From assembly GCA_000708835.1 (NCBI GenBank), contig DF237100.1, forward strand, positions 9,660 to 73,659: a DNA stretch of 64,000 nt, in the 5' to 3' direction. This DNA is from Klebsormidium nitens (Eukaryota; Plantae; Klebsormidiophyceae). A program made the translations under genes and the position numbers. Below the pieces are notes generated by a model, which saw nothing but the letters and a program-made list of their open reading frames with translations, ran no database searches and had not been told where the DNA came from. Positions 1 to 53,700 of this stretch are shown here, in pieces; positions within the stretch are counted from its first letter, which is position 1, and every line of letters begins with the position of its first letter.

Positions 1-2045
1 CACAAATCATTTGAAGAGCTGTAGCTTTTATGAAGAAATTGCTCAGACCTGGTTTCGCGGGTCCGGTATCGATGGTCCTTCATCAGAGAGTTTGTTCCGG
101 TTTTGTAAGAAGGGCAACCCAATATACTGGTCCCGATGCGCTTGCAAAGGCTCCAGCTTTTTACGATCCAATGATGCGCCAATGTTACTCATCAAACAGA
201 TTTCCACTTTGACGCCATCAACTGGTACCGCGATCAGAAATTCGTTCTGTACAACGTCTCTTTTCGATCAAGGTGAGCAATCGGTGCCCTCACCGGATCT
301 TCTTGTTGGCGGTGTTGCCAGCTGCACACTTCAGGAGCTCTTGCATCGAATGGATGGCTCTCACGTCCATGCTCGAGGTATGGATACCCTCAAGGAAGTC
401 CTGGACGATGGCGTAGAATTGCAGTGCCTTGCAGAAGTTCTGGACGATGCCAATTGACTGCGGGTAAAAAGTGAAGGATCAGCTGCGCAGTTCATTCACT
501 TTGCTGATGAAAGAAACTGCTAGGAGCTAAGTTTTTCTTGAACACAACCTCTTGCAAGGGTCCCCTCTACAGCAGTGAGCTGCAACATACGCTACGCAAT
601 CTGCAAACCCTGTCGGATGAATGTGCGTGTAACTTTCAACCAACTTGAGCCCGCAGTCAAGCGCACCCAATCTTGGCACACTCAATTGAAGAGTGTGCAG
701 ACAGACCATAATACCCCCAGTGATGCCAGGAGCTTGCGTGCGCTCGACACTTACCATTTCATCCTGATCGTTCAGCTTTTCGACCAGATCGACAGCCAAG
801 GAGATCCTGTCCACCGTAATCCGAGGGCCTGATGCCCACAGCGGCAGCGTACTGCCGCCCAGTTTTTTGAGGACCGCCGCAGATCTGGCGGGAGCCCAAT
901 CTCCATCGTCTCGCCCATATCCGTGTTGGATACAGAAGTGCTGCGCCAGCAGAGAAGAAGCTTGAAGTTTGCAAGCGTTTGCCTCAATCAATCCTGAAGT
1001 ATGCCTCCGATAACCTGCCTTTGGAGGTCAAATCTCTAGCAAAGGGCGACGTTCTCGGACTACTGAAACAGAGAAGCTATATCTAAAAAAGCTCGTTGGC
1101 TGGATCAAGCTTTGGCGGGATGACCTTTGAACCTCAGCTTAAGAGAAGCTTCATATAAAACCCTGGAGTTCTTTAGAAACCTCAGAACTTTCTACTATGG
1201 CTAACCCAGGCGCTGGTCCTGACTTTCTGTACAAGTACGCCTACATAAGCAGGCTTGTGCGCGGCGACAAAAGCGCAGGAAAAAAAAGTTCGAGTCATCC
1301 ATCCTGTGTTGAAATGTACAACAATTGATGTACAAATTACCTTATAAGTCTTTAGGCCTCGAATGTAGTCCTTTTTGCTCTTCGGCTTCAGATTGGCGTC
1401 CTTCTTTATTGCAGCATTCCAACGGGCGTCAGCAACGTGCCTTTCCCGAGCTCGCTCCTCCGTCTCCTCTTCGACGCACTCCGGATTCTGCTCTCTTCCG
1501 GGAATTCCTTGTGTTTCCGCATTGTCTCCATCATGTGCGTCAGCATTCCCCTCGGACCCCGGCCGACTGCCATGCCCTTCCGAGGGCCTCGCGACTAGCG
1601 CTGCGTCAAGGATACTCGTCCCACTTTTCCGGCCAGCCCCTTGCTTCCGGCTGCCCGCTTGTCTCCAGGAACCCAATCCTCTGCCCCTACCACGCCCCCC
1701 TCGGTTCCGGTTTGAGCGCTGCGCAACTCCTGTCTGGGTAGCTGAGTTAGGCGCCAGGGGTGCCGTAACCTCGGCAAGAGGCGTGGCGGCAGTTGTAATA
1801 GCAGCCGGTTGAGCTGGTTGCTCGGCCGAACTTGGTGGTGCCCATTGGGACTGGCAGTCGACGGCGAGGTGTCGACACTGCCTGCATGTTTCAAGAAGAC
1901 CCTTGGTCAGCTTAGTGTCGATTGAAGCGAATGTCCTGTTCAACGGTATTTTCAGAGGGAGTCGGCTCTCTATGAACGACAAAAGAGAAATCGGTCGAAC
2001 GGGATAGGATGCGTTAAAGGATGGTAAAACGCACGAAGTGCTCAC
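1..2045 (-). CDS. Partial spliced gene, Crypton/Ndc10-like tyrosine-recombinase-derived protein (5' end uncertain, runs off left edge)
   Basis: Exons ending at 1341, 940-755 and 457-293 join in phase 0 at GT/AG sites to give KSKKDYIRGLKTYK-HFCIQHGY...GPRITVDRISLAVDLV...EM-SIGIVQNFCKALQFYAIVQDFLEG...VRAIHSMQELLK...NKKIR. This matches the remembered pattern of the Crypton/Ndc10 core-binding region (Y...F..FC, vT.eKl.lF, v..y..Al.....Q, R....LL). A further open frame at ~240-50 reads ...HRDQYIGLPFLQNRNKLSDEGP but could not be joined in frame. Confidence 0.45.
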
Positions 2046-2410
2046 GAATCAGAGTACTAAAAGGGGAACGAGCGATTGCTATGGGGATGTTGAGAGGGCG
2101 ATGAGAAGAAGGGTGACGGAGAAAAATCAGGGGCCCTAGGTAGAGAGGACCAGAAAGGAAACAAGAAGTGCGGCCCCGGAGTTGCTAAGGGTGCCGGTTG
2201 GTGGTGACCGATTCCTGTAGATCTTGAGTTGCATGCCGCCGTAAAGGAGAGCTTAAGAAGGTAAACGAGAGCTTACGAAAGGACGAAAGAGCAGATCAAA
2301 CCGGAATCACCAAGAAAGAATGCAGTTTGATACCCAAAAGGATAGGTCGTAGATCGGAGCTCAAGGGAATGACAAGGAGGTGTCACGTGGCAGGCCTTGG
2401 GCGAAGCGAA

Positions 2411-4830
2411 TTATTCGAAGCCTCGAGCCGATCGAAGCTTGATCACGGCAGATTCCGAATGCAGTAAGACCAGATTACCTGGACGGACTTGGCCTACGTC
2501 GTGCGAAGAAGACTCGGCGACGCTATTCCTGCCACGTTGCCCACCTCGCGAAGTCCTGCTTCTTGCATTCTCCGCCTGCCAAGTAGGAAGCGTCGACATG
2601 GGCGATGCTCTTGATTGTCTTGAGCGAGCTGGATCGCCGACAGTAGCACGTAAAATCAGAGGCTCGTCCTCGGACTCACAATCGTCTTCGACAAGACCTG
2701 TAAGAAAGTCACATGGGTCAGTTGAAGGGGTCAATTTTTCAAAGGCGGCCTGTCAACTCAACTCAACAAGTTACCGTAATCTCAGATGTTGCTCCATTGA
2801 CCTGAGCAATCAGCGGGGTAAGCAAGGCACTGAGCGGTCTTTATAAGTTTTGAAGAGAACAAAAGTTGGGTTAACAATCAACCTCCGAATCCAGCTCAGC
2901 CCTCACGGTTTGAACTTATGTTGTTGGTGAAGAAGCGTGGAAAGCTGAACCTTCGTGAATCGAGGCAAGCAGTAAAAGGTGAGTTCGTATCTGCATGAAA
3001 GCTGCAGATTTGTATAGCTTTCTTAACACTTCGTCCTTGCGCTCAAGTCACTCTCAACTGAAAGCAGTGACCGGGTCCAGGACAGGCCTGCTATGAAGAC
3101 AGCCAGCCTTCACAGAAGCTCCGGATGGACACTTTTAAAGAAAAATAAACTGAAGAAAGTAGTTACAATAATTGATCAGAGTTCACTGTCGAACGTGCTT
3201 GACAAGCTTCAGTACAGCTATGACCAGATGCATTGCTCTTCACTGCATGAAAACTGTGGTCGATAGATCCGTGGATGCCTTCGATCGTTCCGCTGAAAAA
3301 GATCATATCCCTCTCTTAAGAAGACGTGCTCACAGGCAAGAGCTTACCGTCGACTCGCGCCTGCTCCTCTGTAAGGGCTGGCCCGGGATTCGTCTCAACA
3401 TTCCCGCGAAGCAGGAGCATTTCTGCCATAGCACAGCAGTTTTTGGTGTTAGCGAGCTTCGCAAGTACATTGTTGAGTCCTTTGCGAATGATAGCATTAA
3501 TTGCTCACTAGGTTAGATATGAGTGCCGCGTTTGCCTGACTTAAGCAACGGGACAAAGTGGAAAGGCAAAAGATCAGTCACTGGTCTTGAAAGCATCCAA
3601 AACGATAAGGACACTTTTTTAAGAACGCCGCTTCCAAACAACGAAGTACTTCAGCAAATGACACGGGGCTCAACACAAGATTGCGAAAGTCAGAGCCCAC
3701 GTATTTCGGCCGAGGGTCACTTGAGCTCACCAATGAGCGCTCTGCTCAAAACCTGCTTGATGCCAATGTCGATTTGAGCCACACCCTGCCCATGGCATCT
3801 CTGACCCTCGTCAAAGCACCCCCGCAAGGGTGCACAACTGGCCCAGCCTGCAACAAGGATTTGAGCGTCATTGGTCGCCTTCTTACCCGCCATATTGGCC
3901 CTTTTCATTGTTCAATAACGTCCAGTTAACAACTGCATGTCGAAAACCTTGCTCTACTACGTCTTTTGCGGCTTCCTGCGATTCCATCACTGATAGTGAT
4001 ATCAAAAGACTGAATGGACCATCCGCTGCACAACCCCGGAGAAATCCAAAGGCCCCGTTCGTATCAAACGAAAGGCGAAACGACATGGAGTGCTCACAAA
4101 GGACGTTCCGAGCTGGCGCCAGCGCGTCTTGAATAAGAGATGCATGCAGCTCCTGAACCTTTCGAAGGTGCTTCTCTTCTTCTTGCTCCGCCGCTCGGAG
4201 CTCCTCCTTCAGTTGGCACCTTCGTTGTTCACGGCGCTTGAGCCATTCTGTACGGTTTCAATATCCTTTCAATATCCAGTCGACCTATAAGGGGCTATCA
4301 AAATTCTGTGAACTGTGACGTGGCAGCTCACAAGAAGGTGGACCTTTGGAGAATCGGAGTGCTTGGCAGGTCATAGACTGTTGGCTTCGGAAAATACATC
4401 TCACCCTAGTCTGCTGTACATAAAGCGTTGAAATGAAAGAAGAACTTTCTGTCACACTTAATGCTTGCTATTTGAGAAAACATCGTTTTGCACTTGCATT
4501 TATAAAGATGAAGGTGGAGAAGAAGCAACTCACGACCAAGCAGAATAAGAAGCCCGAAAGGGCCAGCGCTGACATATAAGAGAAGAGAAGGGAAAGCCAC
4601 CAAAGAATAAGAACAGGTCAACACGATGCAATGGCAGCTGAGAAGAGTACGAGTCTCATTACCTTCCCAGCTCTTGTGGACAGAGAAGTATCCAACGGAC
4701 GCCGCGCTCAGTGCTCCAGCGGGCACTCGATCCTGGTGTGCTTTGCAGCACCACTCGATAGCCCCCCCCTTCTTGCCGCCACGGCGCCCGCAAACTGCTG
4801 CAAGCTCGCAACTGTCGCACTAGATGCCAT
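2411..4830 (-). pseudogene. Multi-exon gene of unknown product, probably decayed; contains the 2A-like motif
   Basis: ATG at 4830 (MASSATVASLQQ...). Several exon-like blocks have good splice sites (EWLKRREQRRCQLKEELRAAEQEEEKHL at ~4235-4095; 4030-3890; ~3480-3350; last exon ~2700-2411), but some junctions could not be kept in frame. Confidence 0.35.
3379..3420 (-). other. 2A-like (StopGo) peptide motif MLLLRGNVETNPGP
   Basis: Direct translation: atg ctc ctg ctt cgc ggg aat gtt gag acg aat ccc ggg cca. It matches the 2A consensus (hydrophobic run)-G-D-(V/I)-E-x-N-P-G-P except for D>N. Confidence 0.6.
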
Positions 4831-4900
4831 GGTAATCTGCATTGGCACCGTGTCAGATCAGGGAGCGGCTGCTGGGATCAGTCCCGTGCAAGTATACTGA

Positions 4901-5074: not shown

Positions 5075-6457
5075 CTGACGTGAAGGATCCATTACAACTG
5101 TCAACACCTGATTGGGAAGTTATTGCGCCTAGCATGCTTTGGTACATGGCTGTGATCATATCCGCTTTGCTGGAAAGATGAAAGCCATGTTTCGCTTCCG
5201 TCATGCCCATCACAGCACGGCAGCCTGCCTGACCCCTAGAACTGTTCAGGATCAGTTTTGAGCTTAAGCTCGGCTTGTTCACGACTCAAAGACTTCAAAG
5301 CTGCATTAATCTGTTCACTTTGACTGAGTTGCGGTGAGCATGTACTGAAGCACTTAAGACTGGCAGCTCTAGTATGGAGACATGGTGTACTGCTTGAGAA
5401 AGGAGAATAACAGGTCTGTTGGCTGACCTTTTCCATCTCCTGTGAGTAACAGGCCCTCCAGGTTCAGTAGGAAACAGGCATGTTTTGCAGACTGCCCCTC
5501 AGATTCAACTGTACAGCGGGGGGTCCCAAGACCATGCTGGGCGGAACATCCATGGAATGTGGGCTCTGAGCACTTTCTTGCATGTCCATCTGCTCTGTTC
5601 AATCCCGAAACACTTGCTTCTACTGTCAGCGGCGTGCCCCTTCTCACGAGTGGACGTGTTGTCGCTCCGAGTCCTTGTGGAGGCTGACTTGCCAGGTCTT
5701 CCATAGTAATGTGCTAATCCGGAAGCGCTGCAATATTGTTCAAGGCTAGCACTTAAAACCCTATGTTTTTGAGACAGAGGGCCCAGCCTTCCAGTTTAGT
5801 CCTGCAGTATGCAAAGAAACTCCCCAGATCCCCAGCTAGCCTAGACCCCTAGCTTTTGAGGCCAGAAGGCCAGGCCGTCTGTCCCCTAGTCTTCTCAGCC
5901 CCTGCCGGACAACTTTGCAGCTCAGAAGGGCTAATATACACCTAAGGAACAATGGCGTCCATGCTTTTTACCTCTCGCTGAGCTCCCCGTGCAACTGCCA
6001 ACTTTTTGGTTTTCTGCACCTAGCTGCGATAAGAAGTATTGTGACTGTCAAAGCTCAGGAACTGCCAACTGGCCCCAGTTTAACCGTTTTTGAATTCAAA
6101 TTTTGGAAAGGACACAGATCGTTCGATTCGAAGGCGCTGGCCGTTCGATCTGATCCTTGCGAAAACAAACCCGCTATACTACAACTCAACACCGCAGGCT
6201 AAACCTGCACGGTCAGTACGTACACAGGCATACGGGTGTTTTGTACTATACCTAAGCCGATTTTCTAGTGCCTCTTTCGCACACTTCGCATGATTCGCAT
6301 GGTCTGTTCCCGGGGCCATCGCATGCGAAACTTGGACTGTCGCCAGGTAAAGGGCGACATATACTGTAGCTCCTTTCGGAACCTTTTCCCATTGCAGGTC
6401 TCTAGTCATGGCTTCAAGTTCAAGTTTAGGCTTTTCACCCATTGCTTGAAATTGAAT

Positions 6458-9081: not shown

Positions 9082-12000
9082 ATGACTCGCAGAGGACTGC
9101 GGGCCCTGGCCTTGACCGCAACTGCAGCGGTGGGGACCTTGTATGCTGTCCAAGCTCGTAATGCAGCATTTAGTGATGCTGGGGCCGCCAGTTTCTCAGA
9201 TGAGGTCCCCCCAAGAGCCACACAATTGGGAGTCCTCAAAGGGAGCAGCCCAGTCAGGTCAGTGGCAGCACTCTGGATTTGCTGTGATTGTGCAAGAGCT
9301 CTGATCTGACTCATGTGGCCCTCTTCCTTGTATGTGATTCGCTGTATCATCAGTAAGTGATCCTCTTATTCTGATACGGTCCTAGTGGTTGTTGAGTGAT
9401 TATGGGGCCCTAAAGGACCAAGCTAGGTGGACATCACAGGGACACCAGCTTGAGACAAACTTTCAGGTTTATGTGACAACTGCTTGCTTGTTAGATTTCA
9501 GGTAAACAGCATTATGGTGGAGGTCTTGTAACTGACAGAAGTTGTGATGCACTGGTTGTGACTGACCATTGCAGATGAGTGGCCTCATTCTTATGGGACA
9601 TAAGGGTGTCCGCTGCTTCTCTCAATGGATCCTGTAGCTGAGCTGGTTTGCACGCCTGTTTTTAAAAAGTGGAAACAGGGTGAAGGAGAATCAAGGCAGA
9701 TTCTGATAAGTGCTCAACAGAACCAGCTCTATAAAAAAAAGACGACCTTTTCTTCAAGGTCCGCCCACATCAATGAAATAACTTATTGTGCTGTGTCTCT
9801 ACAGTCAATTCGACATTCTTGTCATTGGTGGCGGAGCCACTGGTTGTGGGATAGCTGTTGATGCCGCTACCAGAGGCCTGCGAACAGCCCTTGTGGAACG
9901 AGAGGACTTTGCAGGTATGATGTGCCAGATTCCACCCCGCGTGGAGCCAGAGAACTCTCACCTCTGTACGAACGTTGCAGTTTGTGAGAGGCTTCCTTAT
10001 GTTGTTGTTGACAGCAGAGTGTTGCATCTGATTGGTGTTAGATCTTTTGATCTATCTAAGTGCTTCATTCAAATACATGGGTTCCAGAAGTGAAAGTTTT
10101 TCTTGTCTCACGCCAGATAATCCAGGTGCCCCAAACCTGAACCACCGCCTTCGTCTTTTTGGGGCGATTCTCGTATGCAGGACCTTGTTTTTGATCAGGT
10201 CTTCCTTTCCTTTGATCAGGTCTTCTTCACCACTCCTGTCCATCATTTATATCAGCTAATACTCGTATCCTCCGTGCGATGTTTCTTGGATTGAATTCAT
10301 ATTAAAGAAGCCCGTTTCCCATCTCCCAGCCGGCACATCCTCTCGGAGCACTAAGCTGGTCCACGGCGGCGTGCGCTACCTGGAGAAAGCCGTCAAGAAC
10401 GCCGACCCCGGCCAGCTGAAACTCGTGTACGAGGCCCTGAAAGAGCGCGCCACCATCCTCCAAAACGCCCCCCATCTGACCGCCCCCCTCCCCACCATGA
10501 TGCCCTGCTACTCGTGGTGGGAGATTCCTTACTACTACGCGGGCATGAAGCTATACGACCTGATTGCCTGGAGCCGCGTCCTGCACCTCTCCCGCTTCCA
10601 CAGCGCCAGCGAGTCCCGCGAGATGTTTCCGACGCTGGCGGCTTCGAGTCCCGACGGGCGCAGCCTAAAGGGCACGGTGGTTTACTTCGACGGCCAGATG
10701 AACGACGCGCGGCTCAACGTCTCGCTCGCGTGCACGGCGGCGCTAGCGGGCGCCGCGGTGTTGAACCACGCCGAGGTGGTGGGACTGAATAAAGACGAGA
10801 CGACGGGCCAGGTGACGGGGGCCAGGGTGCGGGATGCAGTCTCGAGCCAAACATTTGACGTGCACGCAAAGGTTGTAATAAACGCCACCGGGCCGTTCTG
10901 CGACTCGATACGCAAGATGTCGGACGGGGAGGCGCGGCCTATGGTAACCACGAGCAGTGGGGTGCATGTGGTGCTGCCGGATTACTTTTCGCCGGACTCA
11001 ACCGGGTTGATTGTCCCCAAGACCAAGGACGGAAGAGTGGTGTTTATGCTGCCATGGTTGGGGAAAACGATTGCGGGGACAACGGATGCGGAGGCGCCCC
11101 CGACGCAGCGGCCGGAGCCGCACGAGGACGAGATCAGCTTCATTCTGGACGCGATCAACGGGTATCTAAGCGTGCCGGTGAGGAGCTTGAGTCACTTGGA
11201 CTTTCGAGAGTTAGAAACGGGGTCGAACTTTGTAGGGCCCTTCCACCTTTTGATCTTGATTAATTCAACGCTGAGTGTCGTGGAAGCTCTAAGTAGAATC
11301 AAGTGAAGCATCTCGATGGAGTGAGTGACCTGGGTAGAAGAAAACGGGACTTCAGGACGACGAGTATTATCGGCCTGGCTGGTGTGAGTTCACCTTCTTG
11401 GAAAGTCTGGAAAGTCTGGAATTGAAAACCCCCCAACAGAATCAAGGCTTTTTTGCTGAACAACTTAGTGATACGCCAAACGACTTTTTTAAAAAAAGGA
11501 AAACATTGAGATTTCGAGTCACACAATGTCTTCTTTCACGTTGTTCTTCAAGCTGTGGTGGCGTCAAAGGGCGTCCGGCTTTTTGACAGAGAGCGAGAAG
11601 ACCTCTCTCGGTCTCGGGTTCATCTTACGAGGACCGAGAAAAAAACAAATTGCAGTGATCTGGATCTGTTTCTGTGACCTATATTGGAGCAGTAGCTGAG
11701 TCAAGGATGGTAGAAACTAGAGTTCCTCATCCCTAATCCGGATTCATTGCCCCGGACTTCTTGCTCGGCTCCTTCCGTTTGCGGGGAACCCTTTCCCCGC
11801 AAACGTGGGCAAGAGTTTTTTTGTGTCGCTGGAAGGGTGTTTTGTGTGTTAATCCAAAGTGAGGAAAGTGCGAGCTCCTCCAGCACGAGGCGGCCGTCTC
11901 TCGTTTCTGACTGCGCCTCTGTGGGACGTCTCTGAAAGTGGATTCACAGGCAGAAGACATAGGAGAGCTTTTACATGTTGAACGAACAGAGTCGGGTCGA

Positions 12001-12896
12001 TGCTCTGTCCACTCCTTCTACCCTGTCATGCCTTACGAAAATATACCAATTCCGCTGGTGCACGGGTATCGCTACTTTGCTATCCGCCGGATTCCCTGCG
12101 GCACCTTGCAACCCTGCCGATTTAACGGCCGTAATTTGGCTGTCTTCCTTAACGTGGTAGATTCTAATCTCTGGACCAGGTCCGAAGGCAGGACGTTTTG
12201 TCTGCCTGGAGCGGCCTGCGCCCGCTGGCCACCAACCCCGACTCCAAGGACACCAAAGATATCGTCCGCGACCACGTGGTCACCGTCGGCGAAGACGGGC
12301 TCATCAGCGTCAGCGGCGGCAAGTGGACGACGTACCGGTTAATGGCGGAGCACGCCGTGAACGCCGCCGTGCGCGCCGGGAAACTGACGCCGCAGTCCAA
12401 GTGCGTGACGGAGAATCTGCTGTTGGTGGGGGCGGAGGGCTGGGACCCGTCGCTGTTCGCGAGTTTGACGCAGCAGTACGTGCGCATGAAACGGACGTAC
12501 AGCGGGAAAGTGGTGCCCGGGGTGATGGACACGGCCGTCGCGAAGCACTTGACGCATAGCTACGGCGGCCGGGCGGACCGTGTCGCGTACATCGCGCAGG
12601 TGGAGAGCTTCGGGAAGAAGCTGGCGCACGGGTACCCGGACCTGGAAGCGGAGGTGGTGTATTGCGCGCGGCATGAGTACTGCGCGTCGGCGGTGGATTT
12701 CATAGCCCGGAGATCGCGGCTTGCGTTCTTAGACACGGCGGCGGCGGCGCGGGCGCTGCCGCGGGTTGTTGAGCTGCTGGGGCAGGAGTTGGGCTGGGAC
12801 AAGAAGAAGCGGAAAGCTGAGCTGGCGGATGCGCAGAGCTTCTTGGAGACGTTCAAGGCCAAGTCAAACGCGCAGTTTGTTGATGGGAAGCACTAG
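9082..12896 (+). CDS. SDP6: Mitochondrial FAD-dependent glycerol-3-phosphate dehydrogenase
   Basis: Exons 9082-9257, 9805-9914, 10330-11177 and 12180-12896 join in frame (616 aa). Motifs [69 protein letters not shown]; N-terminal targeting-like sequence. Confidence 0.96.
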
Positions 12897-24179: not shown

Positions 24180-27100
24180 ATGGAGGCTCTCTTAGGGCCC
24201 CAGGACCCTTATCGCGAGGACTTGCGCTCAGCTCTCACAAGCGTAAAACGATCTGGCACGTTCAGCTGTGGTGGCTCGTTGATATTCTGCAGTCCTCCTG
24301 GACTAGAAATCCCCGGAGTTGGCCCCATCGGCTTACCGCTCATTCAACAGCAAGCGCAGGCTTTGGCTTCCCAAGCACGTGCAGGACCAAGGTAAGAATG
24401 AAAGACCCAACTCCTGGTGATACATGGGGATACATTCGTATTCAAATCGTCAACCCGTTCCTAGAGCAGTGCTATCAGCACCGCTACTAGTGCTCAGTTT
24501 AGCATCTGATGTAGCTGTCCGGCTTCTACTTGCCTCAAGCTTGAGAAGACGTTTGGCCATCAAAAAGGATCTGTAGCAACTCAATAGATATGTCTATTTT
24601 GTATCTTAAACATCGTCCTCCTACTTTGGTTTGCAGAGCAGCGATTGGGGACCACTACCCGTGGGGTCAAGGTTTGCAGCTCTTACCCACGGAGTTCAAC
24701 CTGGCAGGTCTCGGTTGGGAGACCCAAGTGAAGCAGATCGTAAATGAGAGGGTGAAACCAGGATTACGCCTTTCGACGTCAACAAGGGTGGTACCAAGGC
24801 TGAACAAGCTCCTTCTGTACGATGCTGGTGGCTTCGCCAAAGGTCACTACTGGGACAAGGAGAAAAGGGCCGACGATTCTTTTGGTACTCTGATGATTGT
24901 GCTCCCAACAGCTCGTGCAGGAGGTAAGTCATCCATGACAGCTGGCTGTCCAATCAATGCATTTTTGCAATCCTTTGGCGGATTCTGCCTTCCAAGACTG
25001 TTTTCCATATTTCGAAGTTTGGCATGTCGTTCTCCCCTGATGAACGTTGCATGCTGACAATTGGGCAAATTTCATCGCAAATAAGGAGTTAAAAACCCCT
25101 TGAAAGCTTGTGAAACAACTCTTGGGTTCTCCAGGAGAGTTGGTCGTGCGCTATTGGGGTCAGGAAAGTACATTCGACTTTGCAAGAGACGGCTTCTACA
25201 ACATCAGCTATGCGGCCTTCTTTGCCAACTGTGAGCACGAGGTCCTGCCGGTCCGAACCGGATTTCTTCTGGCGCTCATCTACGACCTTGTTGCTGAGGT
25301 AAAGCCTACAGCTGCTTCTGTGCCATACGCATCAACGCTGAATGGCCTTTCACCTGGTATCACGGGTCGTTGACATGGATTAGACGTTATGCCTTTCTGC
25401 AACGAACAAAGTTTTATGCTTTCCTTGCTGGGCTCAACTGACAAGTAGATCAAAAGCGTGCTTCAACTTGCACATAGTGTGGCGAATTTTCCAAGTCGTA
25501 TCCTCTGCACTTGGCTTTTCGGAGCCGTCTCGTGCAATCCCTCTATTGACCACCAAACTTGCAAACAAATACTTCAAGGAAAAGCTCAAGTACTATCCTT
25601 AGTGGAGCATTCTTTTCCCTTTTCTGAATAGCCTAAACTTCTTCGTACGTGCTTTGGCAGGGGTTCGCCTGTGTCCCACAGCCCGCTGATAACAATAGAG
25701 CTGTGAGAACAATCCGAGAGTTGATGAGGGACTGGAGCCAAGACAGCTGTGGGCCTCAGAAGCTCGTGATCCCACTCACGCACCTGTACTCCGACAGCAT
25801 CTTGTCCTTCGAAAGCCTCCAGGGGACAGATCTTGCGACAGTCGACGCTTTGCTGCAAGCTTCCAAAGTAAGCGAACGTATAGAGTCAAGCTTGGAAACA
25901 ATCCTGCATCGAGCAGGCACATCAGTCATGCAGTGCCTGGTATACTACATCGAAATACAGGCCTATATTGCTCTTCCTTAAAAGGCTTCCCTCTCTCAAA
26001 TTCTCGCCTCGAGACAACAAATGAATCACCCTTCTACAGGGTCTGCGTTCTGAAAGCTTCAATGAATGAAAGGCATCATCTGTTCTACACCTCGCTGAGA
26101 ACATAGGGAACCTCGCTCCTCCGTAGGTCCCTGGGGGTCAACTTTTCCACCCCTACATCGGTCTGCTGCAAAGAGGCTATTCCAGCTTCCCGCAAGAGAA
26201 GAGCCCTCCAATGGAACTCACGGACGTAAGAGGCTGCGAGGGACAGCAGGAGTGGTACTATCGTCTTGAAGTCAACCTTGAGGGTAAGAGCCGCTTTTCA
26301 AAACCTCACTCTGTTTTCCTCGATTACGCAGATTCTGCACACCGGGCTATGCTTCGCATTCATTTGCGATGGTCGGCTTTTGAAACAAGCTCGCCATGGT
26401 TGCAAGCGGAGTCTACACTGCTTCCATCTTTATCTTCAAGGTCTTTCCTCATCTTTCCTCATCTTTTTACCTTGATATCTGTATGCTTCTTTTTGACGAG
26501 GCACACCGTGAACACCGCCTGCAGTTTAGTGGAGGAAAGAAGTGGCCTGGCCATCCCTCCAGTAGTCCTACTGAGAAGCAAAACCAATCTTGAACAGGGC
26601 GTACTTTTGCAGAGCTGATTCCTGGGACTGCTCCCTACCTTTCTGCGGATGACGCAGAACCGGGGTTTCTGGATGAGTTCAACGTATCCCGTAAGGCCGC
26701 AGTTGTGATCTGGCCGCACACCAGCCGCTGGGAGGTGCGCAGTACCAATTGTGCGGGGGCAGCGCTTGCGGTGAGTAGTCGCCGTTTTTCCACTCCGCCG
26801 ACATCGTTCTGGCCAAAAGTCTTACGCGAGGCTCTGCTTTTCCGCTTTGGTATTGGACCTGATTTTCCTTCTCGCTCTCGCTAAAGCAACAGAAGCCGAT
26901 GCAAGAAACGGTCAATGTGATCCTCTCGCAGCAGTTTTGTTTGAATGCACCTAGCGACACTTAATGTCTTTCATCATAATTTGCTATGTCTTTGCAGGAA
27001 GCCGCCTCGCTGTCCGAGATTGTAGCAGCCTTGCCGCGGCTTCTCGAGGCTGCTTGCCTGAGCACAGGCCGCTTCTCTCCCGGCGAATCCCAGACTGTGG

Positions 27101-29226
27101 CCGACCTGGTGCTCGAGCACGGTCAAGTTTATGCCGTGACAGAGCTGTCCCGTGCTCTGAAGGCTTTGGCCGTGCACGCAGCTGGCCGGCTCTTTGGCCA
27201 GCCGGCGAGTCAACTGGTTCACCTGGTCATCCGTCACGGTGACGTGGAGCTAGCGAAGGTGAGAGAAATTCTGAGGCTTGCTGTTTGATCCCGAGGAGTC
27301 TACGAGATATTGCTGCTGTCCCGAAAAGGATTCTTCCCATCTGTAAGCATACCTGACTCGGTAAATTGCCCTATAACGAGCTCGTCCGCAGATGCGCTCC
27401 TCTGGAAGCCGATGATTCTGCTGTCTACCAACTTCTGTTCCTTAGCAACACGCCCAGATTTGCTTAGCATTTCAAGAGCTGACGTTTTAAACACAGATCT
27501 CGGGCTCAATTTCCTCCCCTCAATGGATTGCAGGCTTTCCTCCAAGGGTACGTCAGCCCGCAATACGAGCACGGCGTCGTTGCTTCCCTCGCAGCCCGTT
27601 TTGGTTGGAAGACTCTGGGACCCCTCATCGTAGGCGCCGCCCTGCGATCATTTTCTCCTCCTGTCTTCGAACGCGGCCTCTTGCTACTGTGTGAAATCGC
27701 TCCCCCCCAACAAGCGAGCGAACTGCACGGGACTGGCACGGCGATATCTGGCTCAGTTACGGACTCAACGGAACGAGGTTTCGACAAGCTCTTCCGAGGA
27801 GGCGAATCCGTTGAGGGTCACGATTTGGACCAGCCTGACAGTGAGCGAGCAGAAGTGTCTCGACAAGCTATGGAAGCGGTCGTGGCAAAGATCTGTGGCG
27901 CCCAAACACCTGCCCTTCTGAGTTTCAACAGCTCCGAAACGATGTTCGGCCCTGGGAGCTTTCAAGTGACCGGCCAGTATCTGAAGGTCATCGAGCGATT
28001 CGGGTAAGATGTGTGGGCGCCCGCAACCGAGAGATTTGTCAGAGAGTCACTCGCCAACCGAGAAGCGGCGGTCGCCTTTGTTTCGAATCTCGCAGCGGCG
28101 GGGAGCGAACTAGAGCGAACAAATAGTTGCGACCCTCAGCAAGTTCCTTACGTCAGGAAGCTCTTAGTCGTGGCCATTAGGTTTCAGGAGTACTTTGCGG
28201 GCAGGTTAGTCGACGTCTTGCTCTCCGAAGAGGACCCACTATTTAAACTGGGGTGTTCTCCACCAAGTGCGCGCAGCTCCAACTTCGTCAGCGATCTGAT
28301 GGCAACCCTCGACCGCTTAGCATTCAGCAGCGAGAGGATGGAAGCTGTCGTTGCCCAGTTCTTCGTTACTCCAAAACTCCACAACTTAGAGGTCACCCTT
28401 CTCCCTGCCGTTGAGCAGCTTCTTCGATATCTAGGAAGCCGCTACAAGGACAGCTCCTGGTTTCTGAAACTGTACTGGGGGTGCCTTGACGCCCTCGAGA
28501 ACCGCTGTGTGAAACCCCCCCCGCTCGATGTGTGGGTCCTCCCAACCGCGAGCGCCTGCGCCTGTAGAGACTGCAAGATACTGATCCAATTTTGCATGGA
28601 TCCTTTTCGGGTGGAACTTGAGCTGAAGTGCCCGGGGCGCGACTCCAAAGAGCATCTCATCGACAGTGTCGAGAGGTGAGCGTGTTCTATTTTTGCCTAT
28701 GTCCTTTCTTAGGGTGCTCACTCGGCTTAGAGCGTGTCGACAGACTTTCTGGGTGATTGCTGCCACTGTGCCCTTCAAGTACTCCCTTTGCGGGATTCTG
28801 CGGCTCACTCTGATATCTCTTAGATTCTGAAATAGTTTGAAGGCTTGTTGTGGGCGCCGTTTATCAATGCTCATCTGGACTCGTGTCTTGCCGTAATCTG
28901 CACCTTATACTTGATATTAGTACCGAGATGTCGATATCCTACTTTTCGACAGGAACCGAATGCCCATCATCATAACCAACCAGGAGTCGGCGCTTGAGAG
29001 CGACTCTGCACCACTCTCCTGCATCAAGATGGGTGCCGAGGAAGACTTTGATCAGAGGATTGTGGACCTGCATTCTAGAATGCAAGCGGAGTACGAAAGC
29101 AACATGAGCAGGATACAGTATATGAGAGCATTGATAGGGGAGAAATGCGGGAATTTTTGGTCAGTAGTCGACGCTTTGAAGCAAGAGCACGAAAATTGGG
29201 ACTTTCACGAGAATTTGATTGGATAA
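24180..29226 (+). CDS. Large 2OG-Fe(II) oxygenase-like domain protein, copy 1 (catalytic residues altered)
   Basis: GTFSCGG...PGLEIPGVGPIGLPL; LNKLLLYDAGG...SFGTLMIVLP...GGELVVRY; YAAFFANCEHEVLPVRTGFLLALIYDL; long helical C-terminus with CACRDC motif; spliced exons; paralogue at 50780-55796. Confidence 0.82.
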
Positions 29227-36321: not shown

Positions 36322-37000
36322 TCAAAGTGTTCCAGTGTTGCATCCATCTGGCGCGAGGCGTTTGAGGATGCCTTTGTCTCTGTCCGAGAGCACAATGCAT
36401 AATGTTCTTCTGCTCGAACTCATAAAAGTGGTTGCTTGCTTTTCGATTGGGAAAGCTCTAATTTGATCATTTGGGTTACCAATAAAAACACGACGTTTTT
36501 TCCTTTTACATGCATTAAGGTTGCTTGTTGATGGAAGACGTTTCTTGCAAATCTTAGATATAGTATTTTCGATTGGAGGTGCTTGTTCTTGACTTGGAAT
36601 TTGGATAAGACTACGTTCGGTCATTTGTTGTGCAGCAAGCTCGTGCGTTCGTGACACATTAATATCACGATGACCTGGATAGATAAGAGCTTCGTAATGA
36701 TTGCCATTACAATGAACGATATGTATCATATTTGCTGATTGATTCGTTTGCGTATTGTAATTTATAATGTCCATCGGTCTTCTTGTTTCCAGCTTCCATA
36801 TTACAATCGGAAGTTGAAGCAGTTCCGCTATGACATTAATCTCAAGTTGAGTGCCCCATATACCATCTTGGCTCATATAATTAATGTAAGCTTCAGCGTT
36901 CGGAAATATTGGAACGGGATCAACATTTTGCACGTCTGGAGCATCTGGGCGATCAGGTTTATGGCAGAAGTTTGCATATAATGAATAATGAATTGATCTG
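36322..37000 (-). pseudogene. AT-rich intronless OTU-family deubiquitinase fragment (C-terminal half), possibly foreign
   Basis: YINYMSQDGIWGTQLEINVIAELLQLPIVIW...IHIVHCNGNHYEAL (36888-36685) is the OTU WG...E / His-loop signature. No DGNC catalytic Cys motif is visible upstream. 36721-36780 has 19/60 G+C. Confidence 0.7.
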
Positions 37001-37322
37001 GCATGCAGTCTGAGTACTGCCCCACGTTTGCAAAGGCGCTGCGTCAAGTTGCGAGCCAGAATGCACAACAAAGAGCCGGAGGAAGGAAACCTTAGTGGTT
37101 CCGCAATCAAGCTTGGGCTCAGGGCAAGGGGCAAGGGCCACTGGGACTGGCCTAGCTTCTTATTGAACATGTTACGAAGGACACGGCGTTTAGTGTCTTG
37201 GGCCAGCTGTGGCCTCCTACCTGGCTCTCAAAGGCACAAAGTTGACCGGCGTTCAAAAGGTCACCGTCTCTGCACCCAGTGCTGAAGCAGGGCGCTGCAA
37301 GGACGAGGTTGCAGCGTGGCAG

Positions 37323-50779: not shown

Positions 50780-53700
50780 TTAGTCAGTCCAGTATCCTGG
50801 AGTGTACCAGCTGTCCTGCTCCTCATCTAGACTGTCGATCAACGCGCTTACCAACCCACATCTCTCCGCAATCCAAGCTCTCATGTCCTCTATAGTGCTC
50901 ATGTTACGGTCGTACTCCTCCTGTAATTTTGAATGCCGGTCCACACTTCTCTGATCAAAATCTTCCTCGGCACCCGTCTTGATGCAGAATAGCGGTTCAT
51001 ATTCGTTCTCAAGCGCCCCCTCCTCATTGCTTATGACGAAGGGCATTTGGTTCCTGCGGACAGTTTGTGTAAGAAAATGTCTGTGAGATCGACTCTCAGG
51101 GCGTAGACCCGCAGGGGGAGACAAGCGTCTAGCCGTGTGATGATCGTGATGATGAACGGCGGCCATGATCCACTATTCTTGCTGTGAATAAAGAGATCGG
51201 AAGATCCTGGAAGAAAGCTGCGCCCTGCGACAGTTTGTCAGGAATGACAAGATTTTAGCACGCGCCATGAAAAAATCTGAGACACTAGAGTCGTTTTAAG
51301 AATACATTAAAATTGGTAACATTTGCAGCAAGATAACTCCAGACAGATTATGACCTTGTGACAGTCTTACCTTCGGACGGAGTCGATGAGGTGCTCCTTA
51401 GCGTCGCGGCCCGGGCACGGCAGCTGAAGTTCCACTCGGAACGGATCCATGCAGAATTGAACTAGCTGCTTGCAGCCTCCACAGCCACAGGCGCTCGCGG
51501 TGGGGAGTACCCAGACGTCGAGCTGGGGGGGCTTCACACAGCGGCTCTCCAGAGCGTCCAGGCACCCCCAGTACAGTTTCACAAACCAGGTTTTCTCGTC
51601 GAAGCGGCTTCCTAGATATCCAAGAAGCGGCTCAACGGCGGGGAGAAGGGTCTTGTCGAGGTCGTACAGTTTTGGTGTCACGAAGAAGTGGGCAACGACG
51701 GCTTCCATTCTCTCTCCGCTGAACGCTAAGCTGTCAAGGGCTGTCATCAGGCTAAATACGAAACCGCCATTGCGAGCGTATGGTGGCGGCAACTCCGTTT
51801 TGAACGGTGGGTCCTCTTCGTTGAGCAAGGCGTCGACCTATTTGCCCGCGTAGTGTTTGTGGAACCTCTCGGCGACGACGACGAGCCTTTTGAGGGAATC
51901 TTGCCCAGGTTCACGCTTAGCCGCTCGCTCTAGTTCGATCCCTGCCGCTATCATCGTTGAGAGAAGGTCGGCCGCCGATTGTGAGTCAAAAATTAACCCT
52001 CTGACGATCACCTCAGTTGCCGGCGCCATCATATCCCACCCGAACCGCTCAACCACCCTCAGATACAGTCCGATCACTCGCACTTCCCGAAGATCAGGCA
52101 TCGGCGGGCAGTGGGTAAGACCCAAAAACGTTTGCGCTTCGCGACCGCAAACCTTTGCCACGAAGGCTTCCACAGCTTGTCGAGACATTGCTTCTCGCTC
52201 ACTGTCTGGTTGGCATGACACCTGACCGTCACTGGTTTTGCTTCCTCGAGCCAGCCCTTTCTCGATTTCGCATGTAACTGGGCGAGGTTCCGCTGTGCCT
52301 GCGTCTTGCGACTTGTGCTCCTGTTGCGGCGGAGCGATCTCGAGCAGAAGCCAGAAACCGCATTGGAAGTGCAGAGCAAACGCGTGTAGGACGGCGCGCA
52401 CGATGAGCGGTCCCAAAGCTTTCCAGCCAAACTTGACTCCGAGGGGAGGCACGATGCCGAGTTGGTACAAGTGGCGGTCCAGAACCTGGCTGGCGTATGC
52501 TTGGAGGAAAGCCTGAGGTGGACAGAAAGATAGAACAATGACAGTGTCCCGGGGAATCGGCTTGCAGAATCTTTAGCTTTCAACCTGCTAAGCAAAGCTG
52601 AGGTGCTACCAAACCAAAGCATTTGGTGACAGGGCAAAGCATTGGTTTTCAGGGGAGCCGTCCGCGGAAGAGCTCGAACAAAAGAGACTCCCGGAAAAGA
52701 CATGTATGAGCACTTGCTATTCTAAAGAGTCCAGGAGATCGAAGCAGAAAAGCAAAGATTTTGGGATCAGAAGAGAAAGCACTGAGAAACCTTCTGGGAT
52801 CGGGAGAGAAAGCTCTGAGAAACCTTCTCACCTTCGCTAGCTCCACGTCACCATGACGGATGATCAGGTGAACCAAGCTTCTCGCGGACGGGCCGAAGAG
52901 CCGATCTGCTCCGTGCACTGCCAGAGCTTTGAGAGCACACGACAGCTCTGTTACGGCGTGAACTTGGCCGTGCTCGAGCACCAGGTCGGCCACAGTCTGG
53001 GCTTCGCCGGGAGAGAAGCGGCCTGTGGCCAGGCACGCATCCTCGAGAAGGCGCGGCAGGGCTACTACAGTTCTCGACAGCCAACATGCTTCCTGCGGAG
53101 AAACCACGTGTGCGGTCTCTATCAAAACATGTTCTCTTCCTTAGTTGCTTTCTGGATCTTTTGAATTAGCTTTAGCACGTCGGTTGTAGCCTTCTCGCGC
53201 ATCGCTGTCTGCCGCTCTGAAGAGGACAAAGATTCATGTCTAACACCGGAGCTGCAGATTGGAGCCTTGCTTATTGGTACATGAGGGCCAGGAAGATATC
53301 GCAAAGAAACGACTGTCATTGCCGTACGCCTTACCGCGAGCGCTGCGACCGGATTGCTGGTGCTGCGCACTTCCCAACGCCTGTTGAACGGCCAGACTAT
53401 AGCTGCGGCCCCGTAGGTTCCGGAAGAGTTCCAAGCATCTTCGTCGTCGAGAAGTTGGTGGTGGGGAGCACTCCTGGGAAGCAGCTCTGCAGAACAGTGT
53501 GCCTCAACATTGATGGTGTTGATTTCCGAGGAGTGCTGAAAAGGCACTGGATAGGACGAACTAAATCTCTTTCCTGAAGGACGATGGAGGTACGATGGTT
53601 CCAGTCAAAGGAAAAGTGCATGAATTCATCTTTCTGATGCAAGACGTTGGGTCCACAAAAAGGTCGCCATTGTTAACAAACCGTCATCCCGTAGAGTCTT

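What the first reader, a model, noticed from the sequence alone, without database searches (positions are those of the whole stretch)
3379..3420. 2A-like ribosomal-skip motif (LLLRGNVETNPGP) inside a spliced algal gene next to a Crypton-like recombinase
Seen: minus-strand frame ...KLANTKNCCAMAEMLLLRGNVETNPGP-ALTEEQARVD, followed by a GTAAG donor. Established: D(V/I)ExNPGP preceded by a hydrophobic run defines 2A peptides of picornaviruses and of 2A-like motifs in non-LTR retrotransposons and some invertebrate genes. An 8-residue match plus the Leu run is very unlikely by chance in 64 kb. Inference: this may be a plant-lineage StopGo element that splits a product, or a relic of a mobile-element ORF. 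Here it is followed by short spliced exons rather than an endonuclease/RT. The D>N change may weaken or remove activity, and the frame is closed upstream by TAG TGA at ~3506-3511, so translation needs a splice or an internal ATG.
Basis: partly seen in the sequence, partly recalled or inferred. Interest (0 to 1): 0.8.

Follow-up and report, generated by a model that had tools for sequence, protein, structure and literature searches.

The report
Relic 2A skip peptide in Crypton
The virus-style "ribosome-skipping" (2A/StopGo) peptide is real and conserved in a family of Crypton DNA transposons of the green alga Klebsormidium nitens, where it lies between a zinc-finger leader protein and the recombinase, but the copy in this window is a broken copy for which I found no transcript.

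Summary
The motif MLLLRGNVETNPGP is on the minus strand at 3420-3379. It is the only NPGP in all six frames, and about 0.0004 matches to the expanded core motif are expected by chance per window.

- **Locus.** It is Klebsormidium nitens gene model KFL_001510020. The motif lies on a 75-nt exon (3422-3348).
- **Reading frame.** In two expressed paralogues this exon is spliced in frame. Upstream is a leader of about 250 aa with a CxxC...CCxxH module and a coiled coil. Downstream is a Crypton-type tyrosine recombinase.
- **Conservation.** Eight of nine copies or relatives keep (N/G)(V/I)ExNPGP. Only the free position x varies, several codon changes are synonymous, and exon dN/dS is 0.10-0.30.
- **The D>N change.** N is the usual residue in this family, with G in two relatives. 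It is a published functional variant, not decay.
- **This copy.** It has a TAG in the leader (4822-4820) and a 1-nt deletion near 1829. No transcript of it was seen. Its catalytic exons are not in the assembled sequence, because an assembly gap follows.
- **Not tested.** Skipping itself was not tested.

The scan had already noted 2A peptides in Cryptons elsewhere in this genome (s1-310273, s1-323146). I found no paper that links 2A to Cryptons.

The parts
5428..5704 (-). Leader exon Z. It starts at the ATG at 5704 (MEDLASQPP...), covers 92 codons plus 1 base, and ends in a G|GTCAG donor.
   Evidence: ORF. It is 69% identical to the L002 start exon MEYLASQPP.... The RNA contig's loose end upstream of exon A matches the L002 exon end GGGAAAG|gt.
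4663..4836 (-). Leader exon A, a Cys-rich CxxC...CCxxH module. This copy has an in-frame TAG at 4822-4820.
   Evidence: RNA joint 4247/4663. The exon is 89% identical to L002 at protein level. The window has TAG where L002 and L003 have CAG and L004 has CAA. Relatives' versions give weak hits to Zn_ribbon_recom (E 9e-4) and EsV_1_7_cys (E 0.01).
4098..4247 (-). Leader exon B, a charged, coiled-coil-like stretch (WLKRREQRR...).
   Evidence: RNA joints 4247/4663 and 3846/4097, cut +1. This is the only open frame in the exon. It is 73% identical to L002.
3731..3847 (-). Leader exon C. It supplies the upstream half of the 2A peptide (...IKQVLSRALI).
   Evidence: RNA joints 3423/3733 and 3420/3731, with a GTGAGC donor after 3731. 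The ...KQVLSRALI end is kept in L002, L003 and L004.
3348..3422 (-). The 2A exon (75 nt): E-MLLLRG-NVETNPG|P-ALTEEQARVD. The core octamer is at 3402-3379. The predicted skip lies between Gly 3384-3382 and Pro 3381-3379.
   Evidence: The flanks are cag| and |gtaag. RNA joints of paralogues fall at both ends. Alignment A1 covers four copies. dN/dS is 0.10-0.30.
2479..2697 (-). Exon E, the acidic start of the post-2A protein (LVEDDCESEDEPL...).
   Evidence: RNA joint 2695/3346, cut +2. It is 79% identical to L002. The CAG|GTAATC donor was deduced.
1341..1881 (-). Exon F, an RGG/basic and acidic linker ending in ...KSKKDYIRGLKTYK. This copy has a 1-nt deletion at about 1829/1828 that shifts the frame.
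   Evidence: tblastn splits the exon into two frames in the window only. Alignment A2 shows the single-base gap against L002 and L003.
755..940 (-). Exon G, the start of the recombinase core-binding domain (HFCIQHGYG...).
   Evidence: RNA joints 940/1341 and 457/755. It is 97% identical to L002, with dN/dS 0.03-0.10 between lineages.
292..457 (-). Exon H, the core-binding domain continued. It is the last exon of the family present in the window.
   Evidence: It is 100% identical to L002 at protein level. Atlas feature search of the paralogue's residues 225-424 gives core-binding / integrase SAM-like / ALOG / QRICH1 clusters at 0.96. Homology to L002 ends at about window 259, and an assembly gap starts just left of window position 1.

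Best explanation
The window holds a decayed copy of an intron-rich, CryptonF-like tyrosine-recombinase transposon gene of Klebsormidium nitens. In intact members of the family, one spliced mRNA encodes a leader of about 250 aa (a Cys/His zinc-binding module, a coiled coil and a Cys-rich segment) that ends in ...SRALIEMLLLRGNVExNPG. A proline follows directly and starts the recombinase protein (acidic and basic linker, core-binding domain, catalytic domain, GCR1_C DNA-binding domain). The peptide is a class-A, Leu-rich 2A/StopGo element with Asn at position 12. Inferred mechanism: while the nascent peptide sits in the ribosomal exit tunnel, the Gly-Pro bond is not formed. The leader is released and translation continues, so a single transcription unit yields two proteins. 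In this window copy the 2A exon is intact. However, a C>T change creates a stop in leader exon A, a 1-nt deletion shifts the frame of exon F, no transcript of this copy was found, and the catalytic exons are not in the assembled sequence. Here the motif is therefore a relic. Shown: the motif, the exon structure, in-frame splicing in paralogues, conservation, the defects, and the recombinase identity of the downstream part. Inferred: actual skipping, and what the leader does.
For: Motif and rarity. Organism and gene models: (KFL_001510020 at 100% identity; paralogue KFL_013330010). Exon structure: spliced contigs in RNA-labelled public runs, with GT..AG joints. Of the 40 listed differences, 36 equal the letters of the L002 paralogue, so that copy is expressed and spliced from leader exons through the 2A exon into exon F. 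A second expressed paralogue reads ...NPGPPATDEQAR with different codons for P, G and P (loose end at 3386). All leader exons are open and in phase in L002. Conservation: NVETNPGP, NVEVNPGP, NVEANPGP, NVEWNPGP (two relatives), GVEQNPGP, GIEVNPGP; one broken copy reads NVESTLGP. dN/dS of the 2A exon is 0.10-0.30 at dS 0.4-0.6. Relatives with only 36-39% identity in exon F keep the same order: leader exon A, 2A, linker, recombinase. Recombinase identity: atlas hits to core-binding / SAM-like integrase clusters; collinear weak NDC10_II hits on successive exons; GCR1_C at E 3.3e-9 downstream in L005; R (LRGDD), K (GKTNK), THAPRG and LGRW...SY read in relatives. N at position 12 is a published functional variant, and MLLLRG resembles the published LLLLSG-like upstream group with G at position 11. 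Defects of this copy. No contig is 99% or more identical to the window in four runs, and no listed RNA run holds its words.
Against: No experiment shows skipping for any member. D12N was only modestly active when placed in the EMCV 2A context. Absence of expression rests on assembled contigs of four runs, which drop rare transcripts. The runs are labelled RNA only by guess, although their spliced joints argue for RNA. The missing 3' half may lie in the roughly 2-kb assembly gap rather than be deleted. I did not map element termini or target-site repeats, so 'transposon' rests on domain architecture, copy number and decayed copies. The public annotation starts both gene models at the Met of the 2A exon, which is a different reading from mine. 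Pfam gives no above-threshold hit for the recombinase catalytic exons, which could only be scanned one at a time.
Confidence: 0.8

Rival explanations
1. The public annotation is right: translation starts at the Met of MLLLRGNVETNPGP, so the motif is an N-terminal 2A-like sequence, as described for some sea-urchin genes. It would release a 13-residue peptide or act as a dual-purpose N-terminal signal, and KFL_001510020 would be a working gene.
For: Both K. nitens models (P0001, P0002) begin at this Met. PMC12338488 reports that most predicted eukaryotic 2A peptides lie near the start of the annotated coding region. PMC4981915 describes N-terminal 2A-like signal sequences (abstract).
Against: In both expressed paralogues, spliced contigs join leader exons to this exon in frame. 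The Met is not conserved in distant relatives, which read LLLLRG, LQLLQG and ILLIRG/A. The leader exons are under purifying selection and exon A recurs upstream in distant relatives. P0001 reaches the recombinase frame only through an exon path that the RNA contigs do not show and that avoids the frameshift. A 13-residue nascent chain is shorter than the 18-22 residues that the papers give for 2A peptides.
Confidence: 0.06
2. The motif is conserved for another reason, for example as a linker or a protein-interaction site, and does not cause skipping on Klebsormidium ribosomes. The family would then make a fused leader-recombinase protein.
For: No functional test exists. Position 12 is N or G rather than the classical D. 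D12N was weak in a foreign 2A context.
Against: The pattern of constraint is exactly that of StopGo. Positions 13, 14, 16, 17, 18 and 19 are fixed and only position 15 is free (T, V, A, W, Q, V). A Leu-rich hexapeptide and G at position 11 precede it. Natural N and G variants were more than 95% active in their own contexts. 2A works in plant systems when it is introduced artificially.
Confidence: 0.1
3. The family is a vertically inherited host gene family derived from a Crypton, not an active transposon. The window copy would then be an ordinary duplicated pseudogene.
For: Intron positions are conserved. There are few copies in the K. nitens assembly: two annotated models plus at least one more that is expressed. 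I did not define termini. An earlier scan note (s1-361055) reads another Crypton-like gene of this alga as host-like.
Against: Several decayed copies exist in different samples: a broken motif in L004, an in-frame stop in L005, R>C in L007/L008, and a stop plus frameshift here. Divergent lineages coexist in the same sample (L003, L004 and L009 from one run). Relatives keep the full catalytic residue set.
Confidence: 0.15
4. The motif is a chance match in non-coding DNA.
For: Genome-wide, roughly one chance match to the expanded motif could be expected in about 100 Mb. I extrapolated this, and the genome size is from my own knowledge.
Against: The motif sits on an exon with canonical splice sites and is conserved in paralogues and distant relatives through synonymous changes.
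Confidence: 0.01

Closest known systems
Class-A 2A/StopGo peptides of RNA viruses (FMDV F2A type; expanded core (D/G/C/N)(V/I)ExNPGP, PMC12846837)
   Same: The core octamer matches the expanded motif. There is a Leu-rich hexapeptide with Gly at position 11, like the LLLLSG-like group. The peptide lies between two protein-coding parts of one reading frame.
   Different: It is encoded in a cellular DNA element with introns, and an intron splits the peptide itself. Position 12 is Asn, rare in viruses, and appears to be the usual residue in this family. No activity test exists.
2A-like sequences of non-LTR retrotransposons (L1Tc/Ingi of trypanosomes; APE-type elements of animals, PMC3708506)
   Same: A mobile element uses a 2A peptide near the front of its main reading frame to separate an N-terminal product from the enzyme.
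   Different: Here the element is a DNA transposon that uses a tyrosine recombinase, with no reverse transcriptase or endonuclease. The host is a streptophyte green alga. The upstream product is a zinc-finger/coiled-coil protein of about 250 aa.
CryptonF elements (Kojima and Jurka 2011, PMC3212892)
   Same: A tyrosine recombinase with an N-terminal core-binding domain, the R-H-R-Y set and a C-terminal GCR1_C domain (seen in relatives), with similarity to the Ndc10 central domain. Some Cryptons carry a second protein.
   Different: The published second proteins are C48 peptidases, encoded either within the recombinase protein or as an additional protein, with no 2A link. Published hosts are fungi and oomycetes. 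Here a different leader is joined through a 2A peptide and the gene has about 12 or more exons. The window copy lacks the catalytic part in the assembled sequence.
N-terminal 2A-like signal sequences of sea-urchin genes (PMC4981915)
   Same: The annotated K. nitens models start a few residues before the motif, which looks like this class.
   Different: Contigs from RNA-labelled runs show upstream coding exons, so the N-terminal position is an annotation artefact here.

Membership tests
2A/StopGo peptide (class A, expanded core) | Core octamer (D/G/C/N)(V/I)ExNPGP | tested here: met
   NVETNPGP at 3402-3379. The motif definition is from PMC12846837.
2A/StopGo peptide (class A, expanded core) | Upstream context suited to the exit tunnel (Leu-rich hexapeptide, Gly at position 11) | tested here: met
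   MLLLRG precedes the octamer, compared with the LLLLSG-like group and the p11 Gly preference. Further upstream residues come from exon C.
2A/StopGo peptide (class A, expanded core) | Lies in frame between two translated parts of one mRNA | tested here: met
   Met for the expressed paralogue L002. Not met for the window copy itself, which has a stop at 4822-4820 and a frameshift at about 1829.
2A/StopGo peptide (class A, expanded core) | Constraint pattern: all core positions fixed except position 15 | tested here: met
   Eight of nine copies keep it, with T/V/A/W/W/Q/V at position 15 where it could be read. dN/dS is 0.10-0.30.
2A/StopGo peptide (class A, expanded core) | Separated products during translation | not testable with these tools
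   This needs a reporter assay or proteomics.
CryptonF-type tyrosine-recombinase transposon | Tyrosine recombinase with the catalytic R-H-R-Y residues | tested here: inconclusive
   In relatives I read R (LRGDD), THAPRG and LGRW...SY by eye, with collinear but sub-threshold NDC10_II hits. L002 shows the R and the GKTNK box before its contig ends. In the window and 23 kb around it, no catalytic exon is present, and an assembly gap follows exon H.
CryptonF-type tyrosine-recombinase transposon | N-terminal core-binding (SAM-like) domain | tested here: met
   Exons G and H (940-755, 457-292) are 97-100% identical to P0002. Residues 225-424 of P0002 give 0.96 feature scores to core-binding, ALOG, QRICH1 and Phage_int_SAM clusters. 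This is a language-model similarity, not an alignment.
CryptonF-type tyrosine-recombinase transposon | C-terminal GCR1_C DNA-binding domain | tested here: met
   Met in a relative only: L005 18741-19412, PF12550, E 3.3e-9, 37.3 bits against a cut-off of 23. It is not present in the window.
CryptonF-type tyrosine-recombinase transposon | Defined termini with short direct repeats, and polymorphic insertions | not tested
   Homology between the two K. nitens copies runs to the end of contig L002, so no boundary could be seen.

The most novel reading that the evidence does not exclude
Streptophyte green algae natively use StopGo. A lineage of CryptonF-like DNA transposons has carried an Asn/Gly-position-12 2A peptide, split by an intron, since before its sub-lineages diverged. 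It uses the peptide to make a zinc-finger accessory protein and the recombinase from one spliced mRNA. This would be the first DNA-transposon use of 2A. It would also suggest that many 'N-terminal' 2A peptides in eukaryotic protein catalogues are truncated gene models of such polyproteins.
Probability: 0.55. Interest if true: 0.65.

Novelty: new member of a known kind. Interest (0 to 1): 0.45.

Why it matters
2A/StopGo is known from RNA viruses, non-LTR retrotransposons and a few animal genes. PMC12846837 stresses that plant viruses appear not to use it, although plant ribosomes support it.

A family of tyrosine-recombinase DNA transposons in a close algal relative of land plants keeps the signal under purifying selection. 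That gives a natural green-lineage case, which can be tested with a simple reporter. It also gives an Asn-position-12 variant in a native context, of possible use for multigene expression in plants and algae.

There is also a practical annotation lesson. Both public gene models start at the Met inside the 2A exon and miss about 250 codons of leader, which may be a general reason why catalogued eukaryotic 2A peptides seem to sit at protein N-termini.

The window copy itself is a dead copy. It matters only as a member of the family.

Tried and rejected
- **Pfam on local ORFs.** Nine ORFs around the motif gave nothing.
- **Repeats.** The window holds no second copy of the element.
- **RNA runs.** The look-up of sequencing runs listed no RNA run that holds the stretch. 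I therefore laid contigs at 85% likeness, which showed paralogue transcripts but none of this copy.
- **Word search.** The search for homologous proteins with P0002 returned only the two K. nitens models and one contig ORF.
- **P0006.** This hit from the representative search (4,622 aa, 35 stretches) is a translated tandem repeat, not a relative with a 2A motif.
- **Atlas search of leader exon A.** No usable hit. The leader's family stays open; the only hits are sub-threshold, to Zn_ribbon_recom and EsV_1_7_cys.
- **The search of earlier findings by sequence.** Blank.
- **Literature.** Crypton + 2A-like gave one irrelevant paper. DNA transposon + NPGP gave none. Klebsormidium with skipping, 2A peptide or StopGo gave nothing relevant.
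- **Earlier notes' claim.** Earlier scan notes say that sister Klebsormidium peptides are listed and reporter-tested in a 2026 preprint. I could not confirm this. The three candidate papers do not name Klebsormidium in their main text, and no supplements are held for the two I queried.
- **3' truncation.** I first read the loss of homology at about window 259 as a 3' truncation. I dropped that claim because an assembly gap starts about 260 bases further on.
- **Joined model not searched.** Exons were searched one by one by reference, and frames across junctions were checked only in local scripts. For this reason the leader was not folded.
Full report
**Observation.**
The minus strand at 3420-3379 reads M-L-L-L-R-G-N-V-E-T-N-P-G-P, followed by ALTEEQARVD and a G|GTAAG donor. 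It is the only NPGP in the six-frame translation of the 64-kb window. From the window's own residue frequencies I expect 0.0004 matches to the expanded StopGo core (D/G/C/N)(V/I)ExNPGP and 0.00008 to the classical D form. Two hundred shuffles gave none.

**Where it is.**
- A word search with the long ORF at 1185-2048 found a 100% identical protein, KFL_001510020 of Klebsormidium nitens (332 aa). It also found an 88% identical paralogue, KFL_013330010 (424 aa).
- Both annotated proteins begin at the Met of the motif: MLLLRGNVETNPGP... and MLLLRGNVEVNPGP....
- The window lies on scaffold DF237100.1 of assembly GCA_000708835.1 (L001). The paralogue fills a 7.7-kb contig (L002).
- The two loci are collinear over about 6 kb, from window position about 6295 to about 259. 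Identity is 72-77% overall and 82-95% in the exons.

**Exon structure and transcripts.**
- No listed RNA run holds the window's own words.
- I laid the contigs of four RNA-labelled runs of the same species label on 1-4900 at 85% likeness. None was 99% or more identical to the window. Several were 82-96% identical and spliced, with GT..AG joints on the minus strand.
- The joints and canonical splice sites give these exons:

| Exon | Window coordinates |
|---|---|
| Z | 5704-5428 |
| A | 4836-4663 |
| B | 4247-4098 |
| C | 3847-3731 |
| D (the 2A exon) | 3422-3348 |
| E | 2697-2479 |
| F | 1881-1341 |
| G | 940-755 |
| H | 457-292 |

- Of the 40 listed letter differences between contigs and window, 36 are exactly the letters of L002. 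The 1,409-nt contig is therefore the mRNA of KFL_013330010, spliced from the leader exons through the 2A exon into exon F.
- A second, more abundant contig comes from a third paralogue. Its loose end reads ...NPGPPATDEQAR and uses CCT GGA CCG where the window has CCC GGG CCA.
- In L002 every exon from Z to H is open and in phase.
- The 2A peptide is thus internal, and an intron splits it. Exon C supplies ...IKQVLSRALI and exon D supplies E-MLLLRGNVExNPGP.

**Conservation.**
- Two genomic contigs from another sequencing run (L003, L004) carry the same exon set. Across the four copies the exon D alignment shows NVETNPGP, NVEVNPGP and NVEANPGP, plus one broken copy NVESTLGP. Asn, Val, Pro and Gly codons carry synonymous changes.
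- Nei-Gojobori estimates give dN/dS of 0.10-0.30 for exon D at dS 0.4-0.6. They give 0.12-0.62 for leader exons A and B, and 0.03-0.10 between lineages for recombinase exon G.
- A search of 1.84 billion cluster representatives with P0002 found more distant relatives, with 34-42% identity in the linker. They read LLRGNVEWNPGP, LLQGNVEWNPGP and LLIRGGVEQNPGP.
- Their contigs (L005-L008), and one more lineage (L011, ILLIRAGIEVNPGP), have the same order: Cys-rich leader exon A, 2A, basic/acidic linker, recombinase exons.
- Eight of nine copies therefore keep the core. Only position 15 varies, position 12 is N or G, and position 13 is V or I. That is the pattern of functional 2A peptides.
- I do not know which organisms the non-K. 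nitens contigs come from.

**The D>N question.**
PMC12846837 expands the core to (D/G/C/N)(V/I)ExNPGP. It reports natural position-12 Asn variants with more than 95% activity in their own context, while D12N placed in the EMCV 2A context was only modestly active. It also describes an LLLLSG-like upstream group and a preference for Gly at position 11, which MLLLRG resembles. In this family N is the usual residue and not a sign of decay.

**What lies downstream.**
- Exons G and H are 97-100% identical to P0002. Residues 225-424 of P0002 score 0.96 in the atlas feature search against clusters named core-binding domain, ALOG, QRICH1 and integrase SAM-like N-terminal domain.
- L002 continues with exons that read ...LRGDD......GKTNK... 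and ...RH...CAVGA... before its contig ends.
- Relatives add ...THAPRG... and ...LGRW...SY....
- Successive exons give collinear but sub-threshold hits to Pfam NDC10_II at profile positions 82-134 and 188-266.
- An ORF further downstream in L005 hits GCR1_C at E 3.3e-9.
- Kojima and Jurka define CryptonF by a recombinase plus GCR1_C, and note that the Ndc10 centre resembles CryptonF recombinases (PMC3212892).
- The downstream product is therefore a CryptonF-like recombinase. It is part of the same reading frame as the 2A, not a neighbour.

**What lies upstream.**
The leader is about 253 aa. It starts at a conserved ATG (window 5704; ME-D/Y-LASQPP). It contains a CxxC...CCxxH module in exon A, for which relatives give weak hits to Zn_ribbon_recom (E 9e-4) and EsV_1_7_cys (E 0.01). 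Exon B is charged and coiled-coil-like, and exon C is Cys-rich. Its function is unknown. A nucleic-acid-binding or assembly partner of the recombinase is a guess.

**State of the window copy.**
- Exon A has TAG at 4822-4820 where two copies have CAG and one has CAA.
- Exon F has a 1-nt deletion at about 1829 relative to L002 and L003. tblastn splits the exon into two frames in the window only.
- The annotated model reaches the recombinase frame through an exon path that the RNA contigs do not show.
- No catalytic exon is found in the window or in the 23 kb of L001. However, a 1.9-kb run of Ns begins just left of window position 1 and is followed by a Ty3/gypsy element. Deletion and assembly gap cannot be told apart.
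- Together with the lack of identical transcripts, this copy is best read as a pseudogene whose 2A exon happens to be intact.

**Mechanism.**
- Shown: in intact, expressed copies the leader and the recombinase are one spliced reading frame joined by a conserved class-A 2A peptide.
- Inferred: the ribosome fails to form the Gly-Pro bond. It releases the leader ending in ...NPG and continues with a Pro-initiated recombinase. One promoter and one mRNA then give two proteins. Nothing here measures that.

**Comparison and novelty.**
- 2A peptides are established in RNA viruses, in non-LTR retrotransposons and in some animal genes. Earlier work already lists cases in Archaeplastida (PMC3708506, PMC4981915, PMC12338488).
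- A UniProt-wide profile search has been published. Because both K. nitens models are in UniRef, the bare peptides may already be in its tables, which I could not read.
- I found no paper that links 2A to Cryptons or to any DNA transposon, and none on natural 2A in Klebsormidium.
- The scan itself has already reported 2A peptides in Cryptons elsewhere in this genome, and 2A peptides in other K. nitens genes. This finding repeats that on a different copy and a different peptide variant.
- I therefore file it as a new member of a known kind with a context that seems unpublished, and score the window copy modestly.

**Limits.**
- The joined spliced protein was not searched or folded; exons were handled one by one by reference.
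- Contigs cannot prove that a copy is not expressed.
- Element termini were not mapped.

Noticed in passing
window 3420 (start of KFL_001510020) and L002 2990 (start of KFL_013330010): Both public gene models start at the Met inside the 2A exon and miss about 250 codons of spliced leader. This kind of truncation could explain why catalogued eukaryotic 2A peptides often seem to sit at protein N-termini (PMC12338488).
   Followed up: partly
window 24209-29151 and 50855-55764: A large inverted duplication: eight collinear arm pairs, 74-83% complementary, about 22-31 kb apart. It looks like two diverged inverted copies of a multi-exon gene. Pfam found nothing in the longest ORFs (28008-28676, 51841-52572).
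   Followed up: partly
window 36325-37227 (minus strand): A 301-aa ORF with an OTU-like cysteine protease hit (PF02338, E 1.3e-6). The scan also flagged it as s1-346724.
   Followed up: partly
L001 13421-15368 and 17984-22784 (scaffold DF237100.1, left of window position 1): A 1.9-kb assembly gap lies directly left of the window. Beyond it is a Ty3/gypsy-type retrotransposon on the opposite strand, with ORFs that look like gag, protease, reverse transcriptase, integrase and a chromodomain. The scaffold ends there.
   Followed up: no
P0006 (4,622 aa, from the representative search): A translated tandem repeat matches the stretch just after the 2A site of P0002 (best stretch: query residues 12-67) in 35 stretches. 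It may be a satellite derived from a piece of this element, or a compositional artefact.
   Followed up: no
L004 2613-2684; L005 about 14000; L007 13908-14045 (same in L008): Other family copies are also decayed. L004 has the 2A core changed to NVESTLGP. L005 has an in-frame stop in the GKTNK exon. L007 and L008 have Cys in place of the first catalytic Arg (LCGDD).
   Followed up: partly
window 4664-4819 and L007 5718-5864, L005 6574-6714, L011 134-223: The leader's Cys/His module (CxxC, then AV-x-GRRGGK, then CC-x2-H) is conserved down to 47% identity. It gives only sub-threshold hits to Zn_ribbon_recom and to the EsV-1-7 cysteine-rich motif, so its family is unassigned.
   Followed up: partly
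window 10260-12893 (plus strand): An FAD-dependent glycerol-3-phosphate dehydrogenase-type gene (DAO and DAO_C on the called 616-aa product) is the nearest ordinary host gene upstream of the element.
   Followed up: no
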